A stretch of 64,000 nucleotides of DNA. Source: Euprymna scolopes (taxonomy: Eukaryota). Every line of letters begins with the position of its first letter. Position 1 is the stretch's first letter. The stretch is taken from assembly GCA_053919585.1 (NCBI GenBank), contig CM132792.1; one strand, given 5' to 3'. The notes under the pieces are model-generated. The model did no database searches. It saw only the letters and a list, made by a program, of their open reading frames with translations, and was not told the origin of the DNA. The position numbers and the translations under genes were made by a program. Below are positions 418 through 64,000 of this stretch, in pieces.

Positions 418-3400
418 CCATTTATTTCGGGTTTGCAAAAGGGGTAAGTATTGGCCCTTCCACCGGTGCCAGAATGTCTGCGCCAAGTGTTGAACATTCC
501 TCCATTGTCACCGAGAAGCGTCCTTTATGTCAAAGCTGCCTAGAGGTGCAGGAACGGGTCCAGTCTTTTGGGTTAGGAGTATCGAAGGAGTCAAGGGGGC
601 TGGATGCTGTGGGTCTGAGGAAACTTGAATGAGAGGTCTGTTGTTGATAATTGCGGCCACTTCGGCTAAGAAGGTGGTGAGCACTTCATGTGTCAGTCTG
701 GTGCTTCCATGTTAGAGCAGCATGGAATCGAGGATTCTCTTGGCAATCCCTACCATTCTTTCCCACACTCCACCCTTGTGAGGTGCATGTGGAGGGTTGA
801 AGAGCCAGGAACAACCATGATCAGCGAGGTGTCTATTTACCGTGCTGGTATTCAGGTTGAATTCGATATCCAATTCTTTCCTAGCTCCGATGAAATTGGA
901 ACCTTGATCAGAACGGATGATCTTCACAGGACCCCGAATGGAAAAAAAAACGTCTGAGGGTATTTATCAAGCAAGAGGTATCCAGTGACTTCAAGTTTCA
1001 ATATGAACTGCTCTTGTTGACATGCACGTGAAGATCGCAGCCCACCTTTTGCTGTTGGCTAAGCCTCCCCTAGTTCGTCGAGACGTGATGAGCCAAGGCC
1101 CAAACACATCAAGTCCCACATTGGTAAAGGGGGTTTCAAAGGACAGGCGGTCCCTAGGTAGATCAGCCATCTTTTGAATTTGAGTAGGTTCGCAAAGCTT
1201 TCTACAAACTACACGGCAGTGTATAATCCTGCTTATGGGCTTCTTTCCGCCGACAATCCAGAAGCCGGCGGAACAGACTGCACCTTCTGTGAAGTGACGA
1301 CCTTGGTGGTGTATAAGCTGGTAGTGGTGCTTAATAAGCAAGACTGCTACATAGTGCTTTCCTGGAAAGATGAGGGGATGTATGTCGCTGTGATCCAGTG
1401 TGGCTTTACGGCTGCGGCCACCAACCCTGAGGAGACCTTCATTATCGATGAAGGGATCTAATTTGCGGAGTTGGCTGTTCTTGGGGAGCTCCTTGTTTTC
1501 AGGCAGGCAGGAGAATTCCAAGGCATAGATGTCTCTTTGGGCCGACTGGATGATTATATTAAACAGTTGCGCCAGTGCTTCTACTGGAAGTGGTCTTTTG
1601 CAGTAGTGCTAACCGTTACAGTCATCTGTGGTGTCGCTTATGTGGAACGACTGGGATATGTGGATCAAACGAGCGACTGCTTGTTTTACTGTTTTTCAAG
1701 TGGAGATCTTGTGAAGCGGTGGCCCTCGAGCCATACTGAAGAACAATGGGAGGCGAAAGCCGCTACCTTCGGCCGGATTTTAGTCACTTTCAGGATCCAC
1801 TAAGCAATGGGGTTTAGGTTCAGAACGGTTGAAGGTGGGCTTGGAAATGAATAGTGGTCCTTTAAGCCAAGCTGTGGTTGAAAGTTGGGTTGAAGGAATT
1901 GATCTAGTTCCGCTGTCGGCTGGGTTTCTATCTGTGGGCACATAGTGCCATTGTTCAGGCCGAGATGACTGACGGATGCGGCGCACTCAATTGCTGACAT
2001 ACACATAAAACCGACGCTGCTCGTTGCCGATATAGCCAAGGATCACTTTGCTGTCGGTGAAAAAGAAGGTGGAATTGATTTCCATGTCCAACTCTGAAAG
2101 GATTAGGTCGGCCAATTCCACTGCTAGGACGGCTGCACACAGTTCCAGTCTGGGTACTGATGTCCTTGATTGTGGTTCCAACTTGGTTTTACCCATAACA
2201 AAACCAACCTCACAGGAATCGTCGGAGTAGGTGACTCGCAGGTTATAGCCTTAGTTGACGCATCTGAGAAGACACACAACTGTCTGCATAGTGCTGTGGT
2301 TAGGGGTTTTGCGGTGTAAGTCCTTGGTATCTGAAGGTTGTGTAATTCTTGCAGGGGAATCGCGCCAGACAGTCCAAAGTTGTTCCTTCTGGGGGGGGGG
2401 TATCCCAATCAAAATCAGCAGATGTTAACTCCCCAAAATGAATTTGCCCTGGATAATGACTGGCGCCACAAGCCCAAGGGGGTCATAGAGGCTGTTAATG
2501 GTGGACAAAACACCTCTGCGTGTGTAGGGTTTCCTTTCTGGGGAAACATTGAAGGTGAAGCAGTCACTTATAGGGTCCCAATCGACCCCTAGACTGCGTT
2601 GGACAGGCAGCATATCCACATCAACATTCAAATCCCTGATGTCACTGGCGAGGTCCTAAGTGGGGAAGGCATCCAGAACCTCTTTGTGGTTGGAGGCTAT
2701 TTTGTGCAATTTCAAATTTGACTTAACGACTGTACGGGTTTTCCTCAGCAAGGAAATGGCATCCGCTGCAGTAGGCACTGATTTTAGTCCATCATCCACG
2801 TAAAAGTCTCTGCGCACAAATTGATTAACTGTAGGACTGCAATCGAGGTGTTCTCCAACCGACTTCCTGAGGCAGTATGTTGCCACTGTGGGTGAAGGAC
2901 TGTTGCCAAATACATGGACTTTCATCCTATACTCAATAACTTCTTTGTTGGGGTCATTATCCTTATGCCATAAGAACCGCAGAAAATTCCTGTGTTCCAC
3001 TGCTACAAGAAAACAGAAAAACATTTGCTCAATGTTGGCCATAAATGCCACCGCCTCCCTGCGAAAACGAACCAGTACTCCTATGAGGCTGTTGTTGAGA
3101 TCCGGTCTAGTTAGAAGAACATTGTTTAATGATACTCCGTGGTGTTGTGCACTGGAGTCAAAGACAACCCTTATTTTGTCTGGCTTTTTGGGATGGTAAA
3201 CGCCAAACATTGGCAAATACCATCTCTCCTCCTTGTCCTTGAGTGATGGAGCAATCTCAGCTTGATTGTTATCAAACATTCTCTGCATGAAAGAGTTGAA
3301 ATCTTTCTGGAGCTATGGTCTTTTCTTGAACTGCCGGGTCAAAGAGTTGAGATGACTCACTGCTTGCTGTCGGTTGTTAGGGAGTCGTGGCCAGGATGGT

Positions 3401-5735
3401 TTGAGTGGGAGAGGCGCCACCCAGCTGCCCTTGTCGTTCTTCCTTACTCCCTCTTCCATTAGATTGAGGAAGATTGTATCCTCTATGGAGTAGGCCAGTT
3501 GTTCATCTGCCTTGGTCAGCCGGAATACTGAGTTACCCAACTTAGTCTTGTGATGTTACTCCCTGGTTTGTTATGCGTTGGGGCAAGGCTCAAAGTTTGT
3601 TGGTCGGCTCCTTCCCTGGGTGTTGGTGAGGAAGGTGCTCACAGTATCAGGTTTGTGGGTGCGACCAAGGCACACATTGCCCACTATCACCCAACCCATG
3701 GCTAACTTCTGAGTGTAAGGTGCGTTGCGAGGGCCATTGACTTGGGAGTGGACCTTGTGCACGTCAATGATGTCGCGCCCCAGTAGCAGCAGGATAGAGG
3801 CTTCATGATCCAACTCCGGAATTTTCTTTGCCAGGAATCTTAAATGTTCGTGATGGCGCGCGGTTTCGGGTGTAGTAATTTCGGAACGGTTGTTGGGCAC
3901 CTCTGCACATTCAATGAGTGTAGGAAGAGGGAAACTGACACGTCCATCCAATGATTCAATTCGATATCCCTGAATTCTCCTTCCGACCATCTCCATGACA
4001 CCTGCACATGTTCTGAGTGAATAAGAAGAAGGTGGACCATGGATGTTGAATGTCGAAGAATTCAGGATGAGCAAGTGACTTATTGCTATGTTCGTCAATA
4101 ATGGCGTACATCCTTCGTCCTTCGTGTCTTTCTCCCTCAGGGTATACACGGACCAGACAAATCTTTGAACAGGATTTGGCGAACAAGTTATCACCACAAA
4201 CCTGTGTGCAGTGGGTTGTAACACTACTATTCTCCCCGCTGTGAGTTTGCATGGCTTCTGGCGTTGGAGCTTGTATATCGGGTTCAGGGTGAAGAGCGGC
4301 GTTGTGACTGTCACTTCCGCATTCAGAGCACCTCAGTTGGGATTGACAATTTCGATTGGTATGACCGGGAGAACAGCATCTGAAGCAATGGTTGTTTTGT
4401 CTTAGATAGGCCTGTCGTTCGGGAAAGGGTTTCTTTCTAAAAACCCGGCAGCTGCGAAGAGGGTGAGGCAGATTGTGGATGAGGCACATTTCCTTTACGC
4501 TCCTGGGTGCAACTTGAGTGTTATGTATGGAAATCTCTTTCCATGCTGAGGCTCCGAATCGGTCCATCTTCTCTGAAGACCAGGTGGTAGGCGTTAGACG
4601 AAAACTAGGGACGTTCTTGTCCTCTGCTTGTTGCTCGATAAATTTTGTGAACATGAAGAATGGGGAAAAAGGCACTTAGTGTCTTCGTTTGTAGGCAGTG
4701 CCATGGGAAGTCCTTTGGTCCTGCAGTGTGGGGGGAAGTTCGAGGAGGAGGTCGCTTAACTCCCTTAGCCGGAAGTAGTAGTCCCTGGTCACTCTTGGGA
4801 ACTTGTTCAGCCTTTCAAGGAGGGAGTCTTCTATGGCTTCAGGGGACCCATAGAACTTATCCAATTAACCAGCAGGTCCATTTCCTCACTTGCTGTCAAC
4901 CTCATGTCGAGGATGGAATTGCGGAAGGAGGTTCTCCACACCCTGTAATCTTTGGCTTTGTCCGAAAACTTCAGCATACTTGAATGGAGCAGCTCTCTCC
5001 TTACGAAGTACTACACCAACTGCCGAGAGTGGTCAGGAATATTTTCCGTGCTGCTTTCTGTATGTGGCTGTAGGTTTGCATGGGAGTTAACGAGGTTGCT
5101 CACATTTCTATACGATCCAGATGCTGAAACGGGAAGCTGTGTGGGTAGAGGAGTTTATGGAGGAGGTATAGCAGGAGTTTGCGCTGATTGCAAGTGGTTA
5201 TGTATCGTCAAACCAGCAACATACTCCCTCGTGTGCTGCATGGGGTCAGCAGGGGTCCGGTCGACGTGAAGAATGTCAGATCCTCATTCACTGTTGGAGA
5301 CATGCTCCTCGAAGGTCTGAATTGCAGCTTCTTTGATTACAATCTCCTTAGCAGCCTGTAGGGCCCTCTCTTCAGACTCCATTTTAACCCTAGCTTCTCG
5401 TAGTTGGTTTTCTCTTTCTACAAAGAGTAGACTGGCTTTAGCCATTTCGAGTTCAGCTCGAGCGACCAAAGCCTTTGAAGAAGCAGAGGAGACTCTGGAA
5501 TGCGCTTTGCTTGAGGTGGATTTTCCTGCCATAGCGTTGTGGTTGGGGTCTGGAGCTAAAATCAACAAAGAGTGGTTCGGTGCGAGACGAGTCTGCAAAT
5601 GAGAGCAGGTCTAGTAAGCGTAAACCAGAAGAGCAGTCGAATAGCGAAGCCTCAAAACTGGAACCACGTCAGCCAAGAGAAAAGACGGTCCTACTACATT
5701 CCTTTATGCCACGTGGAGACAATTGAGTTTTTTAC
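418..5735 (-). mobile_element. BEL/Pao LTR retrotransposon copy 1, internal gag-pro-RT-RH-IN region, frameshifted and 3'-truncated
   Basis: ORF fragments give Pao-type Zn knuckles (CLIHNLPHPLRSC, CFRCCSPGHTNRNC, CSECGSDSH), RT (KIRVVFDSSA, FYVDDGL), RNase H (FSDAS, PRLELCAA, FTDSK, NPAD) and integrase (HHQG..CRVVC, GLDVFGP, AVHIE, RSDQGSNF, GGVWERMV, FWHRWKGQYL). Domain order is BEL/Pao. Confidence 0.93.
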
Positions 5736-6171
5736 TGTGCTGCCCTCGGCAAAGTGCCTGTCGACACCTTGTTTCAGACAGCCAGTTAAACTCAAACCAA
5801 CCAAAAACAAAACAAACGCATTTTGTTGGGGGAAAGTACGAATATTTATTGATGATGAATTAGGTAAAAAACCCAGTTATGTTATCGGCATGAGGAGTGA
5901 GAAATCAACACATCCTTTCGTGCTGGCAAGCGAACTGAAAAGAACGCGGATTCGAAAGGCCCGCCAACAAGCGACTGAAGTCTCGTTGCGCTCTCGTTGA
6001 CAAGAATGGATAAAGAGAGTTATTTTTTTATAAAAATAACCAAAACAATACCTTAAGTTCCTTAAATAGAGATTTAGCGTGAAAGAAAGGAGAAAGAATA
6101 TTAAAAAAAAAGGGAAAGTTTAAGATAACGTCAAAGCAAACGAGAAGTCAAAGGTACGGTGACAAGTAACA
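5736..6171 (-). repeat. Probable 5' LTR of BEL copy 1
   Basis: Minus strand runs TGTTAC...GGGCAGCACA then GTAAAA. The same TTTTACTGTGCTGCCCTC junction occurs in BEL copy 2 at about 62795-62812. The outer boundary is inferred from a TG start. Confidence 0.6.
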
Positions 6172-9100
6172 AGATGTGGCATCCCCCAACAACGGATGTG
6201 GTGCCTCCCGGCCCCCCCGACACGGTCGCTACACCAGGAGCGTCCCCCATGGTGAAGAAGCAGAGGCCTGTTCCTGGTTGTTTTCATAACACTTCACGGT
6301 AAACAATATTCTTAGTATATGTTACACCATGCTTTCTGCCCTGATTATCATCTTTATGCTGTTACATTACCTTAAATTTCACACTGTGCTTAGATCGAGC
6401 TCTTGAACATGCCACATACAGTGTACCATGAGAAAATACAGGTTGTTGAACATATATACCAACCTTATCAAAAGTTTGGCCTTGTGCTTTATTGATGGTC
6501 AGTGAATATGCTAATCGTATTGAAAACTATCCGATGAAATGCAAACGGAACATTTGTATCACTTAGCTTTAACTTAATTCTTGGAATGATAACTGTGGAA
6601 CCTCTATTAGATCCATTAATTAAAATAGCAATGATGCTGTTTTGATGACATTCTTTTATTTTCATCCTAGTTCCATTACAAAGTCCTTGATTTATGGATA
6701 AATTTCACAGTAGCATTACTATTGCCCCTGTTTTCACATCAAGTCAGTGAGCATTCCAGACAGAGTTAATGAATTTATGAACTCGATAGGATAATTTTGA
6801 AGTTCAGCATCATCATTGGAGATGTAATCTGTACTTAAATATGTATTTATGCCTTCGGGAAGATTATTTAGAATTTCTTCATTTACTGTTAAACATTCTG
6901 TATTTTTGGAGTTATGATGATTCTATTTTCCATTTCTTGAGGGCTGCAATCAAATGTTTCTGAGATTAGAGAACCATTACATACCAAATCATCAGGAACA
7001 TCTATATCATCTACAGGAACGTCATTAAGACTGCTCATTAGTGTACTATTACCAAGATGAAGGAGCTATCTACAAAACTTGTGTTCATTTATGTTAGTTC
7101 TAACGTTTTGTGTTAGCTGTAATTGACTGAAATGATGCCCCAATGTGCAACTTTTAAGACAGGTGTCTATAATAGATGTAGGTGATCCATGTGGCACTAC
7201 TGGCAAAATTTGGCTGACGTCACCTCCAAGTATGAGAAATTTTCCACCAAATATTTTATCGTTACTCATATCTTGTAGACATCTATCTATAGCAAGCAGT
7301 GTATGATTAAGTATCATAAAAGCTTCGTCTATGATGAATACCTTTATCCTTCTCAAAAAAAGAAGCATGCTCTGATACAGGAGAAACGTTACAGACACTG
7401 GTTTCTGTCAGAGGTACAGGTAGTTTGAATATACTGTGGAGTGTTTTCTCTGAAGTTAGTAGCATAGCAGCAATGCCAGTCCATGCCGCAGTGGCGGTTA
7501 CAGTACTGCTGGAGGTGAAGTAATCATATAACATGTTGAATAACAAGGTTTTTCCTGATCCGGCTGGGGCATCTAAATAGAAGCAATTGTTGTTTTGGGC
7601 TTCTTTTTCAGTTGCCATGACAGCCTTGATGATAGTATTAAAGACCTCTAATTGTTCATTGTTTAGCAATTCAACATTAGACCGGTTTGTATTTCGAGTC
7701 ATATTATCTATTGAAGGATCACCTGTTGGTTCAGGTAAACTCATTGCCTGGCAAGAAGAACCATGCGCATTAAATATTGCTTTTATCAAATGAAGTGCAA
7801 TGTTTTCACATATACATTCATCATAAGCAGAAATGAGGTTTTCAATCATGCTCTGTTTATGGTTAATAAATAGTTGAAAGGCATCCACTGGATGATGATA
7901 GAGACAGCATTGCAAACATTCTACGTAGTTGTTGTGGCATTCTAAATGTAGCCGCTTCAGTAAGAACATTTTCTAATTCAGTATCATCTTGCAATAATCT
8001 AAGGCTGATGCAAGCTTCTCTAAATGTAGGGAATGTATGACTTTGGACTGTTCTCAAATCTTCAAATGACTTTGCTCCAAAGACATGAAGAAGCAGAATC
8101 CGTAGATAAAACTTTTCACCTTGGTTTGGTGAAACTGAATACATTCTTGTGATCAAATTACTTGACCGCTTTCTTTTAGTCCATTTTGTAGTAGTTTTGT
8201 TAAATACATAATGATGTGGAATATCACAGTAAAAATATTGGTTAGCAGTAATATCATTCTGATTTAGTTCAAACCAAGCAGTCAAATTTGTGTGACGTTG
8301 TGCTTGTTGAATTGCTTATTCAGCTTGATAATAAATCTGTTGCTATCCAGGCATGTGTACAGCTAAACAGTACACAACATGAGACTATCCATGCATTTTA
8401 TAGTCAGAAAGACGCCACATTGCTTCTGGAGGTGATACATATCTGCATGATAGATATTGCTTGACTTCATCTCTTTGTTCTGATCGCATTGTTTCTCCTT
8501 CATCGATATTAATAGATGAATCATGGTTATTAACCTCCATCATAGCACTATCATGTCCTTTATAAACATATTTAAATATGTATTTTATACTCTTGACTGA
8601 AGAGCAGATTTCTAAGTTAATATGAGCTCCAAAAAAAAAAAGATATTTTCTCAGAAGAAATTTGTTGAAAGGGACTATGTATCTATTATCAACAGTAAAA
8701 TTATCGACTTGAACTGAGTAACCATTATTTGCACGTTTGTAAGCCAGGTATCCATCAATGTTTTCTACTGTTTCTTCTCTAAATGCCTTTGGAAATTTCT
8801 TTTTGCATAATCCTTTACTCATACAAGGAGAATTAGTATTAACTGCACCACATGGGCCATGTAGCATTCAAGATTTAACTAAATCACGAAGCTCTGGATC
8901 TTCAGGTCCAGGTATTTCTGCTGACACAATTGCATCAATTTGTTGAACTGTTCTGATCTTATCCTGATCTCGCAGCATTATGATCATGTGGCAGTGTGGT
9001 AACCCTCTTTTGAAATTCAATAACATAAACATATGCAACAGGAGTTCCCAATACATGTCTGTCTTTAATGCCTTTCAAAAGTTCAGTTAGATGTGCATGA

Positions 9101-9761
9101 TACACACGTGATATTAAGTCAGGTCGATTTTGTGCAAGTTCTGATGACCCCAAGTTGTTTAATATTTTAGGACATCTTGGATTACATGTATAGGTAAGGA
9201 ATAGGTCTGCCTTTCCATATTTACAGAAAACTGCCATTGCATCTTGATACAGTTGTTGAAGATTCCTAGGACTTCCTGTAAATGAAGATGGTAGAATAAC
9301 TGGTACACCAGGATCGCCATCTTCATTCCTTGCTAAATGATCCATTAAGCCAGAATATTGAGCAGCTCTTAGTTGACTTTGATGGCTTTTAATGAAGTTC
9401 AATCTGCACCCTTCAACTTTCACATATGCATCAACGACATATTGTTGGAATAGTTTACCAGATCTATGGATAATACTGAATGAATCTCTAATTGCAAGGC
9501 GATAACTGTAATACTCTTGCATTGTCACTTTATTGCGAACTCTTGTTTGCTGTTCTGGCCTATGTTGTATGTTTATGTGCCAGCCTTGTTCACCATTTGG
9601 AAATAATATAGGATATATCATGGGGTCCAAGTGGCAAGACAGATAAGAAATTCGGTGTTTTGCACAGAAACTATTAGAGTAGAAAGCTTTCTGGCGGTTA
9701 GGGACCTCAACAGTGAAGGGGTGAGATTTTGTTGCTAAGCGGGTTTGTCGGGCATATGTAC

Positions 9762-9796
9762 CACAGTGGGCCCAGATGGCCAATGTTTGGAAATAG
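9762..9796 (+). repeat. Transib 3' TIR (outer, second family member)
   Basis: CACAGTGGGCCCAGA is a perfect 15-bp inverse of 13543-13557, followed by tggccaatgttt and GGAAATAG. Confidence 0.85.
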
Positions 9797-10242
9797 AGGT
9801 GAAGCATCATCACAAATGACTTTTATAAGATTTTTTTCAAAACTTTTGAGGCATATGATCAACTTGGGTTCATTTTAATTAGATTTTAACTGATATTTGT
9901 CTCTGAAAACAGTTCTGGGACCAAATTGACCTATTTTGGCTGTGTCACAAAATGTCGCGAATCTACCGAAATTTACTAAATTCAGAGAAATATTGAAATA
10001 GGCATTATTTCAGTTTGGATTGAGATAGGAAAGTGGTTGAGGGCTTGTTAGAAGCGTATGGCCAAGGAGAACATAATGGAAGCAATTCATGTTGAGCTAA
10101 TATACCAGTTTATGTATTGGCTTTTATAAAGTAATGAATCTGTCTGAAATTGTGTATTTCTGTTGAAAATTGCACAGGTAACAATACAAACATTATGTGT
10201 ATTATTGAATTTTCTCAAAACCTCACATAAAGATAATATAAA

Positions 10243-10320
10243 TTAATCAAGAAAAATGTCTTCAATAAGGCTTGCATACCAGTTCTTGGACAAGCCAAAC
10301 AACCGATTATGTGAACATAT
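10243..10320 (-). pseudogene. Diverged second copy of the Transib transposase C-terminus
   Basis: Minus-strand translation ICSHNRLFGLSKNWYASLIEDIFLD* versus IRSHGRLVGLPKRWYASLVEDIFLD* at the end of the main ORF. Confidence 0.85.
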
Positions 10321-10322
10321 GG

Positions 10323-10357
10323 CACACTGGCCCCAGATCGCCAAACTTTGGAAATAG
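10323..10357 (+). repeat. Transib 3' TIR (inner)
   Basis: cacactggccccagatcgccaaactttggaaatag aligns without gaps to the 9762 TIR. Confidence 0.75.
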
Positions 10358-10647
10358 AGATTAGGCGAAGTCTTACTTTGATTTTTCTGGCATTTTCTCG
10401 TTTTTTTTTGTTTTTCAGTTTTATACCCAAGTACAGAGTAACTAAAGCATATTTTGACTTAGAGAAAGTGTATAAAAGGATACAGGAACCAAAAATGCTT
10501 TGATTTTGTCTAAATTCACGAAATTAGGAGAAATTATAAAATTGGAGTAGTTTCGTTGACTCAACCGAGATAATTCAGTTTGTGTTATGTTTCTCATTCC
10601 ATACTGGCAGATAAGAATATAAAATAAAACAACAAATAAATCACCAT

Positions 10648-17180: not shown

Positions 17181-17210
17181 TAAAATTTTATTACATGATA
17201 GATAAACCAT

Positions 17211-46530: not shown

Positions 46531-46531
46531 C

Positions 46532-49591: not shown

Positions 49592-49634
<43 letters not shown>

Positions 49635-53300: not shown

Positions 53301-53360
53301 TATGAAAAAACACCTTAACCTAGCCCGAGAGCCCGATGGTGGATTAAGTTTCGTAGCTGA
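50309..53360 (-). mobile_element. Tx1-clade LINE with internal deletion (ORF1 remnant, RT end, zf-RVT, 3' UTR)
   Basis: PVRILGVWFG, W..RKLSLKGR, CPRCDEREPETIQHAFFSC, ILAVARMVI; ORF1-like Pro/Glu-rich piece at 52388-52700 joined directly to late RT. Confidence 0.8.
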
Positions 53361-53374
53361 GAGAACAGATACTA

Positions 53375-54098
53375 AACTTATTAAATCCTTTATTCATGTT
53401 AAAAATACATTGAAAATCAACAATGAACAAAAAACTTAGGCACATGGCCAACTCAAAAGGAGGGATTGTGGGTGTCGTTGGTCATCCTTGTCACTCCAGA
53501 ACTAAACAAAATCAAAAAAGTAGGACCCTCCCAACCCCGTCTAGTTGATAGACTGCCCGTTCCACTAGGTTTGTAAAAGGAACCTGGCTTCTGCGGGTCA
53601 GTCTCTAAGTGGGGATACCCTCTAGATGGGGGTGAATGGAGAAAAGAAAATTTTGTGGTTAAGGAATGGGGGTTAGTTTATATTTCTTTCTCTCCAAGAT
53701 GAGTGAAATTTAGAGGAGGGGGTGAAAACAAAAGTTGCAAGAAAGAGGGGGTGGGGATCTTGGAGGCTTCCTAATCAGGGAGGGATGGAACACACAATCA
53801 GCTAGCTGAGAGGCTATTTGTTAAATTTTACTTTACGGAACTGCGCGTTCCACACCTAGGCATGGAACACATATTCAAATTTGGCTCCTCTTCGTACATA
53901 CAGACTTGCTACATGTATCCATCTTCTGTCAAATGCCGCGCGATACAGCCTTCTTCTATCACATCTGATCTTCACCCGTAGTTGGTGTTTAAAGAAAGTG
54001 ATCAGATCCTGATCAGAAAAAGACAACACTCCCCGGCAACCTTGCAGACGCGACGTCCAAATCACCATTCTCGCCACGGCCAGGATTGTAACGTAGAC
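53375..54098 (-). mobile_element. Tx1-clade LINE 3' end, cut by the hAT
   Basis: ILAVARMVIW..LITFFKHQLRVKIRCDRRRL..FDRRW, homologous to 51150-51370. Confidence 0.8.
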
Positions 54099-57000
54099 CA
54101 GGGGTCGGCAACCTTTTGTTTAGCGTGTGCCGACTTAGGGTTTCAAATTATTCAGCGTGCCAACATTTATTATTTATAACGATCAAGGTCAATATACCTG
54201 TTCTCTATATTTATTTCATAAAATATATAATAATGTCAAAGTTTATAAATAATGTGAAAAAACTGTTTCTGAAAAGTTTTTATTATTAATGGGACCCTTG
54301 TCCTTGCATGGTCTTTGCCAATTCCTCAATGTCGGGAACATACTTTGTAACTTTGAGCTTAACACAGTTTTCTGAATGTTCAGGTGTTAGACGACTTCGA
54401 CGTGGAGACAACACTGCTTTCATGTGAGAGAAAATTTGCTCACAAGAATAAGTTGAACCAAAAGCTGAGAGAAGAGCAAAAGCAATTTTCTTCAAACAGA
54501 TGAATGAGCTTGGGAGGGAGATCCAACAGTTCAGAATAGCACCAGACTTTTCAAAATTTTCATCTTCCAGAGACTTTCTTAGTTCAGCAAATTTTAATGT
54601 CCATATTTCTGAAGACCTAAATTCAATCTGTTGCATTTCAAAATCATCAATGTCCATCCAGCTAAAAAGTTCCAGTTGGGCATTTGTCAAATCAAGCATG
54701 TCGGGCTTAATCAGATATGAAAATAAGGATCCATGAATGTAGAAGTCCTGGCTTCGTTTTTCGAATTCTGCTTTGAGTGCTTTCACGTACTCCTGAAGCT
54801 CATCTGTGTTCACTTCGAATTGATTTGCATGATTTTTCACATTTGGAAAGTACTTAAATGCTTTGATGTTGATGTCACGGGTAAAAATGTCAAGTTTCAT
54901 TGTAAACGCTTTCCAATAGCTGAAAAGATCAAGGACTGTTTGTCCCTGTCCTTGTAATTTCAAATTAAGCTCATTCAAATGTGTGTTTATGTCGGTCATA
55001 AACATCAACTTCAACAACCAGCTTTCATCATTCAGCTGAGGGAATCGTTTCTGTTTTTCATCAAGAAACATCTTAATAGCCTCAAGACAACAAACAAATC
55101 TAGCTAAAACTTTGCCTCGACTAAGCCAGCGAACATTGTTGTATAACAGAAGATCTCCATATTCACACTCAACTTCTTGTAGAAGCGATTTGAATTGCCT
55201 GTGAACCAATGAAGAGCGAGAAATAAGAAAGTTGATTATCTCAACAACAGTTTTCATCACAGAGACCAAATCCAAAGACGAGGTCTTTGCACATAAGCCC
55301 TCCTGATGTATAATACAATGAAAACTTAACAGTTTGCGTCCAACATGATTTTCCAGAAGTTTTACAAATCCTTTCTTCTTGCCAACCATTGCAGCAGCAC
55401 CATCGGTTGTTACGCAGAATAATTTGTTCAAGTTAATGTCTTGTTTAGAAAAATAACCAGTAAATGCACACAAAATATCTTCTGCTTTGGTTGTATCATG
55501 AAGGGGTAATAAACAACACAACTCCTCATAAATGTGATTATTCTCGAGATATCTTGCAACCACTGCTAGGCGAGACGCATCGTTTACATCGGTGCTTTCA
55601 TCAAGAGCGACACTAAATACAAGGGATTGCTTTAATCCAGTTGTTTGCTTAGTTGTCACATTTTCAGCCAAGTCAGATATGCGCCTCTCAACTGATCTTG
55701 CAGAGACTGGTATTTCTCTAATTCGAGAGAGTATAATGTCCTTATTTTTTAAATCACGAAACAAAACTTCAGCACCACTCAAAAAAGCTTCTTTGATGTA
55801 TTCACCATCTGTAAAAGGTTTACCATTTAAAGCCACACACTGGGCTATTTTGTAACTACATTCAGTAGCTTTACTCTTCATTCCAACAGCTTGGCTCAAA
55901 ATAACAGTTTGTTTTTTGAAACCAGAAATAGCTTTTTTGATGGCTTCACCTTTTTCTTCTGAAGTTTTAAACTTAGATTGATGTTTGGTTTGAAAGTGCC
56001 TTTGTACACTAGATGTGCGACACACAACACTTTCGCAACAGAAAGCACAAACAGCACGATCCTTTTGTTCCACAAATCCATATTCTATTGTCCAATTGTC
56101 TTGAAATGGGCGATGATCAAGTTTTCTTTTCTTTTCAGTCATATCTAACAGCAGGGGTATTCTGAAAATATAAATAGGCCTAATTACGTAAACATCAATT
56201 ATGATATATATAAAATACCAAACAAATTATTCTTGCCTTTGCTGTGGGAGAACCAGGATACATTTTAATAAAAATTGTGGAGAAAAATTATGTACAGGGT
56301 GTCCCAGAAAAAGTCTAAAGGTTTTGATTAGCTCGAGCTAGGATCCTATTCGTGCGTGGCATTCACAATTTAAAAAAAATATTTCATCCACGTATTCCTC
56401 CAATCATACCATTTTGTTTAGTATGAAGATGATCGAAATTGCTCATCTCTTCTAATCCCAGTTACGAGCTTGAAAATTAAAAGTACAATTTCAAGAATTT
56501 GAAAGGCAATTATACCTTATCTTGTATTCATATTCTGACCACTGAACAATTCTGTAACTCTAGCACCCTTCCTAAATTTAACACCCCTCAATTTCAAACA
56601 GCAAATAAAATGTTTAAAATTAATAATTTTCAAAATTTTTTTAGCTCATTGTGTTTAGGAAAGATTTTTCTTAAAGAAAAGTAAAACTTTTTAAAATAAA
56701 ATCTCATAATTAATTTTATCGTAAAAAATATCACAAAAAAGTCAAAGCTTCCTTACTGCGCGTGAGCGTTTTCACGTAATAGTTTCAATTTCAATTTGTA
56801 AATTTGTAAATTCTTGAAAATTTTCTATGATTTTAAAAATCAATAATTTTTTTTCTATTCATCAAATCCTTTTCATTTTTTCAGATTTTATGTAAAATTC
56901 TACGCTCTTTCGAATGGAAATAAAATTATTTTCTGAAAAATTCATTTTCATACTTCTTTAATTTATTTTTACCCCCCCTCTGTCTAAAAGTATGAAAGTA

Positions 57001-58737
57001 TGAATTTCTATTAAAAATTCGTCTCGGAACACTCTAATTTATATCTTTATTTAAAGATCATAAAAAAATGAATAAAATAATGTGTTGTTTTTTTTTAAAC
57101 CTTTATCCCTTCATTTTGAAAATAAACGCTAAAGTTTAAAATATGTACATTCTTTTATTTTTTAAAAAAGATTTATGAGCTGTGTAATTTTTTTATTTTT
57201 ATCATGCTAAAAAAATTAAAGTTTCTTTAGTCTTTCCCTTAAAATTAAATTTGCTCTTTCGAAGATCTGCTAAAATAGCTATTTTATCTGTATCGGAACA
57301 CTTAGTAAATGTTACGAAAAAAAAAAAACCATGTAAAAATATTTAAAAACAAAAAAAAAATATAAACTGAAAGTTATCCCTTCTATTTATAATCATTATT
57401 TAAAGCTTAAAGTACTCACAACAAACATTCTCCTTTTTTCAAATAGAGTCCACATGTTTTTAATCTCTCTTAGAGCTGATGACAGATTTATGACAAGCTT
57501 AGTGAAAGAAAGGGTAAGTGGTAAGTTAGAGAGTTACAGTATAGGGAGATAACAAAAATGGAAGTTTGTTTTGTTTTGGTAAGCTTTAACCCCAAAATGA
57601 CCCATTGCCAGTCATCGTCTCTTCACAAGGGATGGTAAATAGTGTCATTTAGTGTGAAAAAAGGAGGGGTTTTACATATTGTTCCAGAACATTATAATCA
57701 TTTCTCACTCTTTCTCTCTCTTTCTGCTAAACGAACGACAGACAGACAGCCAGACAGATATTGAAAAAAAAATGACTACCAAAAAATAATTTGTTTCCTA
57801 ATAAGGTTTATCATATTTTGAATATGGTAGCATATACTTAGTTTCATTACAAAACTTAAATAATAATAAAAAGCTAAAAACAAAAGTTTTATAATTACAA
57901 ATAAAAATTTATATACTTTTCTTAACTTTTTTTCCGGCATTGTTTTTTTATTTGTATAAATATTAAAATAAATTTAAACAAAAACAAATAAACTCCATGT
58001 TACACGTGTTGTTATTATCACTGGTAAGTGTTTTATTTTAATTAAGATAATCATAGTCAAAAGATTTTTTGGTTTACATATACACTTTTTATAATTTCAA
58101 GTTAAATTTTATATACACTTCAAGGCATCCGTAGATTTCAAATGTCAGCGCTGCTGCTGATGTAAACAAAACTTCCGGCGATTCGTTGAAATTTTGGGCG
58201 GATTTTATCAACCTATCTCTGAAAATATTGCTTTAATTTCCAAATTTATGAATTCTTGATTATTTTTATTGTTGATTTTTGTAGAGGAATCATTCATTTA
58301 CTTAATGGTCATTTATTTTCGTCTGATAAGTTACTTTTTATATATTTATTAGATTTTTTTATTATGATTTTTGACTAAATTTTACATTTGCAACTCTCTC
58401 ACGCTACGTTGTATTTCATCTGGGTCGGTGAGACTGAGTCACCAGACTCAATTCAAAACGCATTTCAAAATTATAGTATCTGACAGAACATACTTTGAAC
58501 GAGCATGGAGCATCTAACGCCTACGGTTCGCACGGACAAAAATAAAACGCGTTTTCTTGTTGTGGGCATGCACTTAGGTGGCAAGAGTACGCAAGAGATC
58601 ACAGATATCCTCATAATTCCAAGGAGAACTGTTTCCTTTTGGCTGTATGAAGTTTAAAAGATTTGGAGGCTCGGCGTGCCATTAGAATTGCTTGGCGTGC
58701 CACCTGTGGCACGCGTGCCGTAGGTTGCCGACCCCTG
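54099..58737 (-). mobile_element. hAT transposon (Buster/SPIN-like) with perfect 16-bp TIRs
   Basis: CAGGGGTCGGCAACCT at 54099-54114 and its inverse at 58722-58737. Confidence 0.93.
54286..56142 (-). CDS. Intact hAT transposase, 618 aa
   Basis: BED-like CAFC..RHFQTKH, ALDESTD, VTTDGA, HCIIH, VRWLSRG, FGSTYSCEQIFS, RSRL. Confidence 0.95.
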   Translation of the reverse strand: MTEKKRKLDHRPFQDNWTIEYGFVEQKDRAVCAFCCESVVCRTSSVQRHFQTKHQSKFKTSEEKGEAIKKAISGFKKQTVILSQAVGMKSKATECSYKIAQCVALNGKPFTDGEYIKEAFLSGAEVLFRDLKNKDIILSRIREIPVSARSVERRISDLAENVTTKQTTGLKQSLVFSVALDESTDVNDASRLAVVARYLENNHIYEELCCLLPLHDTTKAEDILCAFTGYFSKQDINLNKLFCVTTDGAAAMVGKKKGFVKLLENHVGRKLLSFHCIIHQEGLCAKTSSLDLVSVMKTVVEIINFLISRSSLVHRQFKSLLQEVECEYGDLLLYNNVRWLSRGKVLARFVCCLEAIKMFLDEKQKRFPQLNDESWLLKLMFMTDINTHLNELNLKLQGQGQTVLDLFSYWKAFTMKLDIFTRDINIKAFKYFPNVKNHANQFEVNTDELQEYVKALKAEFEKRSQDFYIHGSLFSYLIKPDMLDLTNAQLELFSWMDIDDFEMQQIEFRSSEIWTLKFAELRKSLEDENFEKSGAILNCWISLPSSFICLKKIAFALLSAFGSTYSCEQIFSHMKAVLSPRRSRLTPEHSENCVKLKVTKYVPDIEELAKTMQGQGSH

Positions 58738-61700
58738 GTCTAGGACATTCAAAGGAAGGGTCAGAGATGAAACATGGTCCGTTAAGCCAAGCTGTGGTCG
58801 AGAGCTGGGTGGCAGGTACCGATCTGGTTCCGCAGTCAGCTGGGTTCTTGTCTGTGGGCACATAGTGCCACTGCTTTGGCTGTGATGAGCTGCGAATGCG
58901 TCGTACTCGGTTGCTGACGTACACGTAAAAGCGCCGTTGCTCATTGTTTATATAGCCAAGGATGACCTTGCTATCGGTAAAAAATAGGGTTGAGTTGATT
59001 TGGATATCCAGCTCCGAGATAACCATCTCGGCTAATTCTACTGCGAGGACCGCTGCACACAGTTCCAATCAGAGAATCGAGACCTCAGGTTGTGGGGCTA
59101 ATTTGGACTTACCCATGGTAAATTCCACCTCACAAGTGCCATCCGGGTAAAGGATTCTCAGGTAAGCCACTGCGGCTATAGCCTTAGTGGAGGCGTCTGA
59201 GAATATGCATAGTTGTTTGCAGAGAGCACCAGTTGGAGACCTACGAGTATAGGGTCTTGATATCTGTAGTTCCCGTAATGCTTGAAGGGAGTTGCGCCAG
59301 TTCGTCCAATGTTGTTCTTTCTGAGGTGGTAAGGGAGTGTCCCAGTCGAAACTGTCTGCCATCAATTCGCGCAAAATAAGTTTACCCTGAATGATGACAG
59401 GTGCCACAAAGCCGAGGGGATCGTACAGACTGTTGATTGTGGACAGGACGCCCCTGCGCGTGTACGGCTTCTTCTCTTGTGAGACGTTGAAACTGAAACA
59501 GTCGCTTTTTGGGTTCCAATCCAATCCTAGGCTGCGTTGCATTGGTATTGTATCTTCATCGAGATCTAGATCTCTGACACCAGTAGCGAGATCTTCAGAA
59601 GGGAAGGCATCGAGAACCTCTTTTCTATTTGACGTTATTTTATGTAACCTCAAGTTGGAGGCTGAGAGGGCTTTGCGCGTTTTTTTCAGCAGGGAGATGG
59701 CCTCTGCGGTTGTAGCCACTGACTTGAGACCATCATCCACGTAGAAGTCTCGCTGGATGTATTTAACAACTGCTGGATCATTCTCCCCCTCCACGGACTT
59801 TCTAAGACAATAAGTTGCCACAGCTGGAGATGGTCTATTTCCGAACACATGAACCTTCATTCTATACTCAATAATTCTCTGGGTTGGATCATTGTTTTTG
59901 TACCAAAGAAAGCGTAAGAGGTCTCGGTGTTCCTTCTTTACAAAGAAGCAAAAGAACATTTGTTCTATGTCGGCCATGAATGCCACAGGTTCTTGTCGAA
60001 AACGGAGGAGGACTCCGACTAAGTTGTTGGTTAGGTCTGGTCCAGTCAGCAGGTTCTCATTTAGGGACCTGTCCATATGTTGGGCACTGGAGTCAAACAC
60101 GACTCTTATCTTATGCGGCTTTTTGGGGTGATAAACTCCAAACATGGGCAAGTACCACATTTCTTTGTTGCTTGGCAGTGGAAGAGCTACCTCTGCCTGT
60201 TCCTTTTCGAATATTCCCTTCATGAAGGAGAAGAAGTCTTGTTTTAACTGTGGCTTCCTTTCGAACTGGCGAAGGAGTGAATGGAGGCGTTTAACAGCTT
60301 GAGGCTTGTTATTTGGTAATCGGCGACGGTATGGCTTGAGAGGAAGGGGTGCTACCCAACTACCATTGTCATCCTTTCTTACTTCCTCCTTCATGATCTC
60401 GATGAAGGTTTCGTCTTCTATTGAGTGGGTCAGCTGCTCGTCGTTTGCCGATAGTTGAAAGACTGAATGCCCCATCTCCGTTTTATGGAATGTGTCCTTG
60501 GCCTGAAATGAACAGGGGCATCTTTCAAAGTTGGTTGATCGACCACGTACTTCACCCTTGGTGAAGAAGGTGTTTACAATAGAGGGCCTGTGAGTTCCTC
60601 CGAGACACACGTCACCCACTATCACCCAGCCCATGTCTAGCCGTTGAGCGTAAGGTCCGTTCTGAGGACCATTAACTTGGGCGCGAACCTTGTGGACATC
60701 AATTATGTCGCGGCCCAAGAGAATCCAGATGGGAGCCGTGTCATCCAAATCCGGAATCTCTTCTGTGATGTGCGACAGGTGTTTGTGATAGCGAGCTGCT
60801 TCGGGTGTAGGGATCTCTGACCGGTTGTCTGGTATGTCGGCGCACTCAATCAGCGTAGGAAGTGGTAGATTTGATTTGCCGTCCAATGATTCTACCCTAT
60901 ATCCTTGCGCTCTCCTACCAGATGTTTCCGTGAAGCCAGCGCAAGTCCTCAGCGAATACGCCGATATGGGTCCGTTGTCGTGAAAGACTTTAAAGAATTC
61001 CGGATGTGCCATTGGCCGGTTACTGTGCTCGTCAATCACTGCATACATCCTTTTTGCCTTGACCCTTTGTCCTTCTGGGTAAACTCTGACTAGACAGATC
61101 TTTGCGCAGGAGCTCTTGTTTTGGTTTTTGCCGCATACCTCTGTACAATGGGTTTCGACATTATGTCTCTCCCCGCCGTGGTGAGGCATGGTGTTAGCAG
61201 GCGATGAGTTCTGCGCGGGACATGGATGAAGAACAGTGTTGTGTTCGTTGCTGCCACATTCTTCACATACACCGCCATGTTCGCAGTTCTTGGCCGTGTG
61301 ACTAGACGAGCAGCAACGAAAGCAGAGATGGTTTTGAACCAAATACGCCTTTCTGTCCTCCAGGGCTTTTTGTCTGAAAGCTCGGCAGGCGCTCAGTGGG
61401 TGTGGCAGTTTGTGTATGGGGCATGCCTCATTTATAGCCCCGGGTGTGACTTGGGTCTTGTTGATAGAGACGTGGTTCCTTCCCTTGGAATATCTCTCTA
61501 TCCTTCCGGTAGGGTGGGTCTCATCCTCGAAGCAAAAACCTGGGTCGTTCCGGTCGTCTGCTTGTTGTTCGACGAATTGTGCAAAGACCGCAAACGGGGG
61601 AAAGGGCACCTGGTGTTTCCGTTTAAATGCAGTGCCGTGGGTAGTCCACTGCTCTCTTAGGTTAAAGGGAAGCTTCTCTACTATGGACTTAAGGCCTTTG

Positions 61701-62800
61701 GCAGTGTCCAAGAGCCTCAGCCCAGGAAGTCCACTGTCATCCTTGGCAGCCTGCAGTTCTGTGAGGAGGTCACTAAATTCCCTCAGTCGATGGTAATCTC
61801 GGCCGATGCGAGGGAACTGATTTATTTTTTCAAAGAGGGAATCCTCAATGGCCTCCGGAGACTCATAACATTTGTCTAGGCGCTTCCAAATTTCCTGGAG
61901 ACCCTTGTCGGGATTGTTTATGTGGGCATTCCTCAGACGCTTTGCGTGTTGAGCAGACGCAGGTCCCAACCATCTCACCAGCATGTCCATTTCGTCGCTG
62001 GGTTTTAGTGTCACATCACCAAAGGAGTTGCAGAAGGAACGTTTCCAAGCTCTGTAATCCTTGGCTTGGTCAGTGAAATTCACCATGCTTTGGCATATAT
62101 GTTCCCGCATGGTGAAGTGGCGCATAATCTCTTTGGTGCTGTCACCATTTTCTGTGTTGACACGCTCCTGATGAGTTGGGTGATATATATTTAGACCTTG
62201 GCAGAAGGTGTCGGGAATTTCTTTTTGGGGGAGTTTTAGACATTCTTGTGTCTTAGGTGGTTCAAATGGTGCTGCTGTAGGTGACAGCATTTGTACTCCC
62301 TTGACTAGTTTTTCCACGTAGTCTTGTGTGCGCTGTATGGGGTCGGCAGGCTCTTGGTCGATGATAATACTGGATCTGCTAGATCCTAGGTCACTGGCCG
62401 CTCGCTCCGACCCAAGGAAGGCCCTGGCTGCAGCCTCCTTCATGGCCACCTCTCTTTCGGCTTCCAGTAGTCGTTCTTCCGACTCCATCTTTGCTTGTGT
62501 TTGAAGCCAAGCCTCCCTAAGCTTGTTCTGTCTGTGGGTGAACTGTAAATTGGTTCTGGCCATTTCTAGTTCTGCTATGACCTTAGATGAGGTGGTGGAG
62601 GAGGACACCCTTGAGCGAGTCCGATAGGAGGACGATGACCTTTTGTCCATTGCTGGGTAGTCCGATATCACACGTGTGTTCTAACACAGAATTTAGGAAG
62701 GGGTTGGCTGTGTAAAAGATAGAAGAGACGGTGTCTGGAACGCCGAAATTTAATGGCCCTGTATCCGCTTCTAGCCTGGAGCGAGTAACTAAAATTTTAC
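58738..62800 (-). mobile_element. BEL/Pao copy 2 (gag-pro-RT-RH), truncated at the hAT TIR; related to copy 1
   Basis: 1200-aa ORF 59069-62671 colinear with copy 1; continues in frame past a TGA into LELCAA..NPAD. Confidence 0.95.
59069..62671 (-). pseudogene. BEL gag-pol polyprotein with premature stop, integrase missing
   Basis: Three Zn knuckles, IDEHSN protease-like site, FYVDDGL, FSDAS; stop within the IPRLEL motif. Confidence 0.9.
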
Positions 62801-63229
62801 TGTGCTGCCCTCCCCAAAAATGCCATTGACATTTGGTTTCGACAGCCAGCATAAACTCGGAAACACCGAAAGAAAAACCAATTCCATTTATAGTGGAAAG
62901 GGAAATTTATTCCGGGAAACAATAATAAGTCACGTTGCGACGCAGAAGGAAAAAATAAGTAGAATAAAGAGAAGGAAAGAAAAGGGGGCTAGCTACATAA
63001 CACATGGAAAATTCGCGTACGGTTCTAAGTTAGTGGTTAATTGACAAATGGTAGAAAAAATATGAATGAATTAATATTGAACTTAATAGCAAAAATAGTT
63101 GGAGAATTGAAGTGAAACAAGACTTACTAGTTAATCTCACACTCAGGGTTGAAGAAGGAAGAAGCGCGTGCGAAGCTTCCAAGTTGCACTAGTTAAAAAA
63201 CCCGCGGAAGCGCCGGTCACGTGGAGACA
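62801..63229 (-). repeat. Probable 5' LTR of BEL copy 2
   Basis: TGTCTC...GGGCAGCACA|GTAAAA on minus; 429 bp versus 436 bp for copy 1. Confidence 0.6.
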
Positions 63230-63317
63230 ACGATCCTTATTATTTAAAGAAATAGAATGAATCTTTCGGAAATAGATTGTTAAGCTGAAGGGGAATTAAC
63301 GACAGAAAAAGCTTCAT

Positions 63318-64000
63318 TCATTTTTTTTTTTTAACAATAACATAATTCATCATTTCAGATATGGAGGAGACATTTTTCTTAAATGATTCAGCATAAGAAT
63401 TACAACCATCAACCAAATCAATTTCTTCTAGACGCCATGGTTTGAACAACATCAATAGATTATGAAAAAAGCGCTCTTTTGTCTCTGAAGTAAATTTCAC
63501 ATTTGGAGTTTCAACAACTTTTTCTTTAACTTTACAGAAATAACCAAAGTTATTTTTAAGTTTCATTTCATCACTTTGATCATTTATTTTTAAATATTTG
63601 ATTTTCTCATAATTTCTAGCAACATAATATAAGCTTTTGTTTTCCATTGAATCAGGTCTATTTAGGTACCATGTTTCAACCATATTGCCATAGTACAAGT
63701 CTGTACAATCAAAAGACAGATTATCTAATTGTTTTTGTGGCAAAAATCTACGGGTTCTATATTGAGGCATGGCTGCATCAACCCACATGACAATCTCAGA
63801 TGCTCCAAACAAATGGTGTCCCAACAACTTATCAGCTACTTCATAAGCCACTAAATCTTTTAGCTAGAAATGAAAGACCAGCATTTTTGTATTTACTATA
63901 AAGAGATTTAGAGTGGTCCAATGACCACACACCTACAGTCTCACCTTTTTTATATTTAGTTTGATAGTTGGTGATATAATGATTCAATACCATTGAACTT
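63318..64000 (-). mobile_element. Helitron2/Helentron-like RepHel linker fragment, running off the window
   Basis: VAYEVADKLLGHHLF, WYLNRP..ENKSLY, LLMLFKPWR resemble the post-Rep region of Helentron-type proteins. Confidence 0.6.

What the first reader, a model, noticed from the sequence alone, without database searches (positions are those of the whole stretch)
418..64000. Near-total orientation bias across all TE classes: candidate uni-strand, flamenco-like piRNA cluster
Seen: about 25 independent insertions (BEL x3, Gypsy x3, Copia, PLE x4, Tx1 x3-4, Helitron x3, Transib x2, Tc1, mariner x2, Merlin, hAT) all code on minus. The only plus-strand TE coding segment (37099-37588) is a local inversion inside a minus element. 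Known: cut-and-paste transposons normally insert without orientation preference, and Drosophila flamenco is a single-strand-transcribed locus of antisense TE fragments. Inference: a long + strand transcript here would be antisense to every element, i.e. a TE-silencing master locus that covers DNA transposons and PLEs, not only Gypsy. The low family redundancy also fits a trap model.
Basis: partly seen in the sequence, partly recalled or inferred. Interest (0 to 1): 0.88.

Follow-up and report, generated by a model that had tools for sequence, protein, structure and literature searches.

The report
Co-oriented transposon domain, candidate piRNA cluster
In a 5.9-Gb mollusc genome, a stretch of at least 184 kb holds transposons of nearly every class that almost all point the same way, which is what a one-strand piRNA (transposon-silencing) locus looks like, but no small-RNA data could be reached, so a giant intron of an ordinary gene is not excluded.

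Summary
In the window, 22 of 50 minus-strand ORFs hit transposon Pfam domains, against 1 of the 20 largest plus-strand ORFs. With 200 kb of upstream sequence added, the bias runs from about -120 kb to the window's end: 42 minus blocks against 3 plus (p = 9e-10). The 80 kb further upstream is balanced (7:8), so there is a left edge and the bias is not a uniform regional property. It covers LTR, LINE, PLE-like, Helitron, hAT, Tc1/mariner, Merlin, Transib and P elements, including very young copies. Poly-T against poly-A tails give independent support (31:11).

The interpretation stays untested. No small-RNA run was listed. PolyA RNA reads on a 6-kb unique stretch were sparse and showed no consistent strand. 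The downstream flank and any gene annotation were out of reach.

My odds: one-strand piRNA cluster about 0.45, intron or non-coding part of a long plus-strand host transcript about 0.40, other about 0.15.

The scan has flagged the same signature in at least nine other windows of this genome. One follow-up at another locus reached the same open verdict. If real, this is a new member of a known kind.

The parts
1..64000 (+). Right-hand 64 kb of a co-oriented TE domain of at least 184 kb (G000:C10, about 44.644-44.828 Mb). The inferred long transcript runs on this strand, antisense to the TEs. The right edge was not reached.
   Evidence: 42 minus against 3 plus TE-coding blocks from -120 kb to +64 kb, and 7:8 further upstream. 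Transcription itself is inferred, not shown.
2155..5544 (-). Decayed BEL/Pao-like element
   Evidence: tblastn similarity to the 1203-aa BEL ORF at 59072-62680. Its ORFs have no Pfam hit.
7069..9822 (-). Helitron Rep/helicase (Helitron_like_N and PIF1)
   Evidence: E = 2.4e-47, 8.2e-19 and 1.5e-19.
11119..12828 (-). Transib-type (RAG1-like) transposase, 570-aa open frame
   Evidence: PF12940 RAG1, E = 3e-09.
17214..18218 (-). Tc1-type DDE transposase
   Evidence: DDE_3 E = 5e-19, HTH_32 E = 4.7e-08.
18696..19133 (-). Non-LTR retroelement 3' part (zf-RVT)
   Evidence: E = 1.8e-05, below Pfam's cut-off.
24059..27011 (-). Retroelement pieces: weak GIY-YIG (24059-24595) and RVT_1 (26511-27011), PLE-like
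   Evidence: E = 0.006 and 1e-06. Other genomic copies are 88-94% identical.
30133..30328 (.). Assembly gap (196 N) in AT-rich non-coding sequence
   Evidence: The bias is present separately on both sides.
33611..34072 (-). Weak Tc1/mariner-type DDE remnant
   Evidence: DDE_3, E = 0.0033 (weak).
34726..35779 (-). Second Helitron Rep fragment
   Evidence: Helitron_like_N, E = 8.4e-39 and 1e-10.
36204..36665 (-). LTR-retroelement aspartyl protease
   Evidence: RVP E = 4.6e-04, gag-asp_proteas E = 7e-05.
37166..37717 (+). The only plus-strand TE-coding piece (DUF7041, gag-like). It ends at a perfect 57-nt palindrome (37587-37643 / 37661-37717).
   Evidence: E = 3.2e-19.
38930..40159 (-). 410-aa open frame of a high-copy family with no Pfam domain
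   Evidence: 39 or more copies at 87-94% identity.
44509..45795 (-). BEL/Pao integrase region (DUF5641, Integrase_H2C2)
   Evidence: E = 4.4e-11 and 2.2e-06.
48685..49095 (-). Merlin (IS1595-type) transposase fragment
   Evidence: DDE_Tnp_IS1595, E = 2.8e-11.
49945..52413 (-). 3' part of a very high-copy LINE (Tx1-like) family
   Evidence: other copies carry 421-739 aa RT-homologous ORFs on the corresponding minus strand. Weak zf-RVT at 51344-51664.
54094..58737 (-). Full-length 4.6-kb hAT element (646-aa frame at 54289-56226). It is 99.8% identical to a second co-oriented copy 100 kb upstream.
   Evidence: 40 or more copies about 100% identical genome-wide.
59072..62680 (-). BEL/Pao element with a 1203-aa open frame (Peptidase_A17)
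   Evidence: E = 9.2e-34.

Best explanation
The window is the right-hand part of a domain of at least 184 kb that is read as one long plus-strand Pol II transcript. That transcript is antisense to nearly every transposon in the domain. The most likely reading is a one-strand (flamenco-like) piRNA cluster. In that reading, the precursor is cut into piRNAs antisense to LTR, LINE, PLE-like and DNA transposons. Insertions that land antisense are kept because they add silencing guides. Sense insertions are lost or stay rare.

Shown: the co-orientation, its left edge, its spread over all TE classes and ages, and the single-copy nature of the locus.

Inferred: the plus-strand transcript, its processing into piRNAs, and the selection that keeps the orientation.
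For: - Orientation: 42 minus against 3 plus TE-coding blocks over 184 kb, p = 8.7e-10.
- Left edge: the adjacent 80 kb is balanced at 7:8, Fisher p = 2.8e-4.
- All classes: about 12 DNA-transposon insertions (Helitron, hAT, Tc1, Merlin, Transib, P element) are all minus, apart from one 264-bp plus-strand block at about -28 kb that resembles the Helitron seed.
- All ages: elements with open frames of 445 aa or more are 10 minus against 1 plus.
- Independent marker: homopolymer tails of 15 nt or more are 31 T-runs against 11 A-runs in the domain and 5:7 outside.
- Trap-like content: few repeats within the domain. Two currently active families each have insertions in or beside the domain. hAT has two copies where about 0.005 are expected, p about 1e-5. 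Gypsy has one copy inside and copies just outside the left edge.
- Magnitude: 42 of 45 has probability 0.013 if the antisense share were 0.8, and 1.4e-4 if it were 0.7. I took those shares from my own recollection of mammalian introns.
- Unique mapping is feasible, because most TE copies here are only 87-94% identical to their nearest paralogues.
- Rarity: the same signature was flagged in roughly 1-2% of the scanned windows of this genome. That is the order of genome share known for piRNA clusters, for example 0.27% in Lymnaea (PMC6128900).
- In Drosophila, strand-specific TE content alone predicts flam-like clusters with a true positive rate of 0.80 and a false positive rate of 0.011 (PMC11400887).
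Against: - No small-RNA library could be listed, so the defining product is unseen.
- On the unique 6 kb at 41500-47499, two polyA RNA-seq runs gave only 34 and 25 reads. Most matched only in part, and read direction was not consistent between the runs.
- The run with even coverage (X1) is probably DNA.
- No promoter, CpG island or tRNA marks the left edge.
- A long host-gene intron predicts the same orientation and the same PAS and 5'ss asymmetry. Its prior is higher, because introns probably fill a much larger share of a 5.9-Gb genome than piRNA clusters do.
- The Drosophila predictor is not calibrated for molluscs.
Confidence: 0.45

Rival explanations
1. The domain is one giant intron, or several introns with small undetected exons, or the body of a long non-coding RNA, in an ordinary plus-strand host gene. 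Sense-oriented TEs bring polyadenylation and splice signals that break the host transcript and are purged. Only antisense copies remain. No piRNA production is involved.
For: - Antisense bias of intronic TEs through purifying selection is well documented in mammals (PMC3088655; PMC3517506 and PMC1794541, abstracts listed).
- The plus strand has fewer AATAAA (257 against 332) and more strong 5'ss-like heptamers (25 against 11) than the minus strand, as expected for a productively elongated pre-mRNA.
- Low, patchy RNA coverage in oligo-dT libraries (X5 covers 20 of 30 bins) looks like intronic background.
- In a 5.9-Gb genome, introns of 100 kb or more are plausible and far more common than piRNA clusters.
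Against: - A 93% bias over 184 kb, equally strong for DNA transposons and for the youngest copies, exceeds what I recall for deep mammalian introns. P = 0.013 even at an 80% antisense share.
- Only about 1-2% of scanned windows were flagged, although a much larger share should be intronic. Ordinary introns here probably do not look like this. This rests on unchecked AI notes.
- No non-TE Pfam domain was found among the larger ORFs of the upstream 80 kb. Small exons would be missed by this test.
Confidence: 0.4
2. The co-orientation has no transcriptional cause. It is chance, orientation-coupled nested or site-specific insertion, replication-direction bias of integration, or an assembly effect.
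For: - Some elements are nested or stacked: a LINE inside an LTR element at -82 to -74 kb, and stacked LINE 3' ends at 50-53 kb. These events are not fully independent.
- The region looks like an insertion hot spot for active hAT and Gypsy families, so local insertion preferences exist.
Against: - Chance is excluded (p = 8.7e-10).
- The families are unrelated and use different integration chemistries: DDE, HUH, TPRT, integrase and GIY-YIG.
- There is no segmental duplication.
- The bias holds on both sides of the single assembly gap.
- To my knowledge, replication-linked orientation effects are small.
Confidence: 0.1

Closest known systems
Drosophila flamenco and flamenco-like unistrand piRNA clusters (PMC10643416, PMC10495008, PMC11400887)
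   Same: - Size of hundreds of kb (about 180 kb for flamenco, PMC6724695 abstract).
- Single-copy locus packed with fragments of many TE families.
- TEs almost all antisense to one strand.
- Contains recent insertions of active families.
- Has a sharp edge on one side.
   Different: - Flamenco is dominated by Gypsy-type LTR elements. Here about a third of the insertions are DNA transposons (Helitron, hAT, Tc1, Merlin, Transib, P), alongside LINE and PLE-like elements.
- No promoter, precursor or piRNAs have been seen here.
- The host is a mollusc with a 5.9-Gb genome.
Mollusc piRNA clusters described in Lymnaea stagnalis and Crassostrea gigas (PMC6128900)
   Same: - Same phylum.
- The Lymnaea clusters are TE-enriched (59% against 31% genome-wide).
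- They are enriched for Gypsy elements and DNA transposons such as hAT and Kolobok.
- They cover a small share of the genome (0.27%).
   Different: - Those clusters were defined from small-RNA reads. This locus is defined from sequence only.
- The passages I read report no orientation bias of TEs within the clusters and no cluster sizes of 180 kb or more.
Antisense retention of TEs in host-gene introns (PMC3088655, PMC1794541, PMC3517506)
   Same: - A long sense transcript.
- Depletion of sense-oriented LINE and LTR elements.
- Fewer polyadenylation signals on the transcribed strand.
   Different: - The mammalian bias is moderate and strongest near exons. DNA transposons were left out of that analysis.
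- Here the bias is about 93% over 184 kb, for all classes and ages.
- No exons were found.

Membership tests
Unistrand (flamenco-like) piRNA cluster | A large TE-rich locus whose TE fragments lie overwhelmingly in one orientation | tested here: met
   42 minus against 3 plus blocks over 184 kb. The window has 14 Pfam-verified minus places against 1 plus.
Unistrand (flamenco-like) piRNA cluster | A discrete boundary, with the bias not shared by the flanking sequence | tested here: met
   Left edge near -120 kb, with 7:8 in the 80 kb beyond it, Fisher p = 2.8e-4. The right edge was not reached.
Unistrand (flamenco-like) piRNA cluster | A long single-strand precursor transcript, antisense to the TEs, from a defined promoter | tested here: inconclusive
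   PolyA raw reads: 34 and 25 reads on 6 kb, mostly partial matches, with no consistent direction. Oligo-dT contigs cover 20 of 30 bins, but contigs carry no strand. No CpG island at the edge.
Unistrand (flamenco-like) piRNA cluster | Abundant 24-32 nt, 1U-biased small RNAs mapping uniquely to one strand | not testable with these tools
   No small-RNA (miRNA-Seq) run was listed for this organism.
Unistrand (flamenco-like) piRNA cluster | Holds insertions of recently active families (memory or trap function) | tested here: met
   hAT: two copies inside the domain, with 40 or more copies about 100% identical genome-wide. Gypsy: 35 or more copies about 100% identical, with one copy inside the domain and others just outside the edge.
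Unistrand (flamenco-like) piRNA cluster | PIWI dependence and loss of TE silencing when the locus is disrupted | not testable with these tools
   Needs experiments.
Host-gene intron with antisense TE retention | Flanking plus-strand exons spliced across the interval | tested here: inconclusive
   No non-TE Pfam domain in the larger ORFs of the upstream 80 kb. No splice-like joint in the 6 kb that was laid. Annotation look-up returned nothing. Downstream sequence could not be fetched. Small exons would be missed.
Host-gene intron with antisense TE retention | A bias of the size usual for introns of the same genome | not testable with these tools
   Needs a genome-wide TE and gene annotation. 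The only indirect hint is that about 1-2% of scanned windows were flagged for this signature.

The most novel reading that the evidence does not exclude
This genome carries a set of very large (100-200 kb or more) one-strand transposon traps. At least ten windows have been flagged so far. They would silence all TE classes, including cut-and-paste DNA transposons, Helitrons and P elements, and they double as insertion hot spots for currently active families. These would be the first flamenco-type master loci shown in a large-genome mollusc. The arrangement left of -121 kb, where TE blocks are mostly plus from -141 to -122 kb, leaves open a divergent two-arm layout.
Probability: 0.4. Interest if true: 0.6.

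Novelty: new member of a known kind. Interest (0 to 1): 0.42.

Why it matters
If small RNAs confirm it, this locus and its siblings in the same genome would give concrete coordinates for piRNA source loci in a lineage where I found no paper describing any. They would also show that the one-strand trap design known from Drosophila extends to DNA transposons in a 5.9-Gb mollusc genome with very active hAT and Gypsy families.

If the domain turns out to be an intron, it would show an unusually strong and fast purge of sense-oriented insertions of every TE class. That is itself a useful measure of selection on giant genes.

Either way, the co-orientation marks a germline-relevant transcription unit of at least 184 kb that can be located from sequence alone.

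Tried and rejected
Only 1.5 kb past the window came in through a search locus (L021). The right edge is unknown.
- Small-RNA runs: none was listed.
- Read laying (one call allowed) on 41500-47499. The polyA reads were too few and showed no consistent strand. X1, with 1.3 Gb of contigs and flat depth 5-7, is probably DNA and is no evidence of transcription. Oligo-dT contigs show only presence.
- Gene annotation through the look-up of encoding contigs: nothing on record.
- Rfam found only one marginal histone stem-loop hit and no snRNA. tRNA scans found none.
- CpG observed/expected and CpG-island scans showed no difference between the domain and its flank (0.68 against 0.69) and no island at the edge.
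- Segmental duplication as a source of false independence is rejected.
- The plus-ORF-rich block at 50-53 kb as a hidden plus-strand element is rejected.
- A host gene in the upstream 80 kb: the larger ORFs are TE-derived or have no hit.
- Base skews (AT skew -0.049 in the domain) follow from TE orientation, so I did not count them as separate evidence.
Full report
**Location and material**

The window is G000:C10:44764001-44828000 in a 5.9-Gb assembly of 925 contigs. RNA runs that share its words are labelled mollusc. I fetched the 200 kb upstream (L001-L020). All statements therefore cover -200 kb to +64 kb relative to the window start.

**The assembly gap**

The gap at 30133-30328 (196 N) sits in AT-rich, non-coding sequence of similar composition on both sides. 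Continuity across it cannot be known. The apparent ORF 30041-30430 that spans it is meaningless. The finding does not depend on the gap. ORFs of 150 aa or more are 2 plus against 15 minus on the left, and 4 against 11 on the right.

**Check of the observation**

- **ORF counts.** Stop-to-stop ORFs of 150 aa or more: 6 plus (984 aa) against 26 minus (7383 aa). At 200 aa or more: 0 against 15.
- **Pfam, minus strand.** 22 of 50 minus ORFs hit transposon domains at 14 separate places:
  - Helitron: 7069-9822 and 34726-35779
  - Transib/RAG1: 11119-12828
  - Tc1: 17214-18218
  - zf-RVT: 18696-19133
  - weak GIY-YIG: 24059-24595
  - RVT_1: 26511-27011
  - weak DDE_3: 33611-34072
  - protease: 36204-36665
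  - BEL integrase: 44509-45795
  - Merlin: 48685-49095
  - weak zf-RVT: 51344-51664
  - hAT: 54289-56226
  - BEL: 59072-62680
- **Pfam, plus strand.** Of the 20 largest plus ORFs, only 37166-37702 (DUF7041, gag-like) hit. It ends at a perfect 57-nt palindrome, which fits a local inverted rearrangement.
- **The 49.9-53.2 kb stretch.** This GC-rich stretch has more plus than minus ORFs and could have been a hidden exception. Five other copies of that very high-copy LINE family, aligned in the window's orientation, carry 421-739 aa RT-homologous ORFs on the minus strand. The window copy is therefore minus too.

**Extent of the bias**

I used the 31 ORFs of 250 aa or more in the 264 kb as tblastn seeds against both strands.

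- From about -120 kb to +64 kb there are 42 minus blocks and 3 plus.
- The plus blocks are two related LINE copies at -91.5 and -79.9 kb and a 264-bp piece at -28 kb. The LINE at -79.9 kb is nested in a minus LTR element whose 453-bp LTRs are 98.9% identical.
- Beyond -120 kb, with one Tc1 added by Pfam, the count is 8 plus against 7 minus.
- Binomial p for 42:3 is 8.7e-10. Fisher's test of domain against flank gives p = 2.8e-4.
- Pfam on upstream seeds adds Helitron, Merlin, LTR integrase, BEL gag, RT and a P-element-type transposase, all minus. Gypsy and LINE are the plus elements.
- Self-BLAST shows no segmental duplication. The only long repeats inside the region are a 4.6-kb hAT (two copies, 99.8%, both minus) and a 5.5-kb Gypsy.

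**An independent marker**

On the plus strand, T-runs of 15 nt or more outnumber A-runs 31:11 in the domain. The window alone is 9:0 and the flank is 5:7. Poly(A)-tailed elements that need not code are therefore also mostly minus.

**Age of the insertions**

Elements with open frames of 445 aa or more are 10 minus against 1 plus. The bias is not limited to old, long-filtered debris.

The hAT has 40 or more copies about 100% identical genome-wide, from 153 first-look candidates. Two copies in 184 kb are about 200 times the expectation, p about 1e-5, unless local hopping explains them.

The Gypsy family has about 2000 candidates and 35 or more copies near 100%. It appears three times within 36 kb at the domain's left edge. 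The region therefore accepts, or keeps, insertions of active families.

**What it is**

All classes share one orientation, although they use unrelated integration chemistries. That points to a property of the locus rather than of the elements, and the natural candidate is a long plus-strand transcript.

The plus strand has fewer AATAAA than the minus strand (257 against 332). It has more strong 5' splice-site-like heptamers (25 against 11). The flank is balanced on both counts. These follow at least partly from TE orientation, so they are not independent proof.

**Direct tests of transcription**

- No small-RNA run was listed.
- Two polyA RNA-seq runs gave 34 and 25 reads from about 1.5-1.8 Gb read. 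Most matched only in part.
- One of the two runs (X24) leaned to first-mate-on-minus over the BEL remnant. The other (X23) did not.
- An oligo-dT library's contigs cover 20 of 30 bins, several with no mismatch. Contigs carry no strand, and DNA carry-over cannot be excluded.
- X1 is probably DNA.

The locus is at most weakly represented in polyA RNA of unknown tissues, and the strand remains open.

**Two explanations survive**

*(a) A one-strand, flamenco-like piRNA cluster.*
- The size, bounded domain, all-class antisense content, low redundancy, capture of active families and unique mappability all fit.
- The 93% bias is higher than the moderate intronic biases I recall from mammals. P = 0.013 even at an 80% antisense share.
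- In Drosophila, strand-specific TE content alone predicts such clusters with a true positive rate of 0.80 and a false positive rate of 0.011 (PMC11400887).
- In Lymnaea, piRNA clusters are TE-rich, enriched for Gypsy and DNA transposons, and cover 0.27% of the genome (PMC6128900).

*(b) An intron or non-coding body of a long plus-strand host gene, purged of sense insertions (PMC3088655).*
- This has the higher prior in a 5.9-Gb genome and predicts the same sequence features.
- I found no exons and could not see the annotation. Small exons would escape my tests.

My odds are 0.45 for (a), 0.40 for (b) and about 0.1-0.15 for non-transcriptional causes.

**Earlier notes of this scan**

These are unchecked AI notes.

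- The preceding window was flagged for the same bias (s1-272036). I confirmed this myself.
- At least eight further windows on other contigs carry the same kind of note.
- One was followed up (s1-292367) and ended with the same open verdict.

The scan has therefore found this signature before on other DNA. About 1-2% of 702 noted windows were flagged. That frequency argues against a feature of ordinary introns and fits a special class of loci, but it rests on what first readers chose to write down.

**Verdict**

If true, this is a new member of a known kind. Small-RNA mapping and a look at the gene annotation would decide the question.

Noticed in passing
window 54094-58737 and L016 (about -45740 to -41095); other copies listed: A 4.6-kb hAT family has 40 or more copies about 100% identical across the genome, so it is probably still moving. 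On contig C5, five co-oriented copies lie 47-54 kb apart (60.54-60.75 Mb). That suggests a tandem duplication of about 50 kb or another co-oriented domain.
   Followed up: partly
L007-L008 (-129779 to -122401, plus strand) and L011 (-99460 to -93980, minus strand): A 5.5-kb Gypsy family with a 1425-aa open frame has about 2000 first-look candidates and 35 or more copies near 100% identity. At the domain's left edge, a full copy is followed head-to-tail by a 2.2-kb partial copy.
   Followed up: partly
window 37587-37717: A perfect 57-nt inverted repeat with a 17-nt spacer lies at the end of the only plus-strand coding piece. It looks like the breakpoint of a fold-back or inverted duplication.
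   Followed up: partly
L015:6150-6195 (minus), about -53.8 kb: A histone 3' stem-loop match just above Rfam's gathering score (35.1 against 34 bits), with no histone ORF beside it. It is probably chance or a captured fragment.
   Followed up: partly
L012-L013 (-82246 to -74411): A CpG-rich LTR element (GC 0.54-0.59, CpG observed/expected about 1.0) has 453-bp LTRs that are 98.9% identical. It carries a nested, oppositely oriented LINE with a 1032-aa open frame, which is one of the three sense-strand exceptions in the domain.
   Followed up: partly
L006-L008, -141 kb to -122 kb: Just left of the domain edge, TE-coding blocks are mostly plus: 5 blocks against 2 small minus ones. The locus could therefore be a divergent two-arm unit. 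There are too few independent events to test this.
   Followed up: no
L020:6582-9137 (minus), -3418 to -863: An 852-aa open frame with a THAP domain and a TNP-like RNase H N-terminal domain, that is, a P-element-type transposase.
   Followed up: no
window 38852-41199: A high-copy family (39 or more copies at 87-94% identity) has a 410-aa frame with no Pfam domain. It has an internal array of tandem repeats of about 90 bp, whose copy number varies between copies.
   Followed up: no
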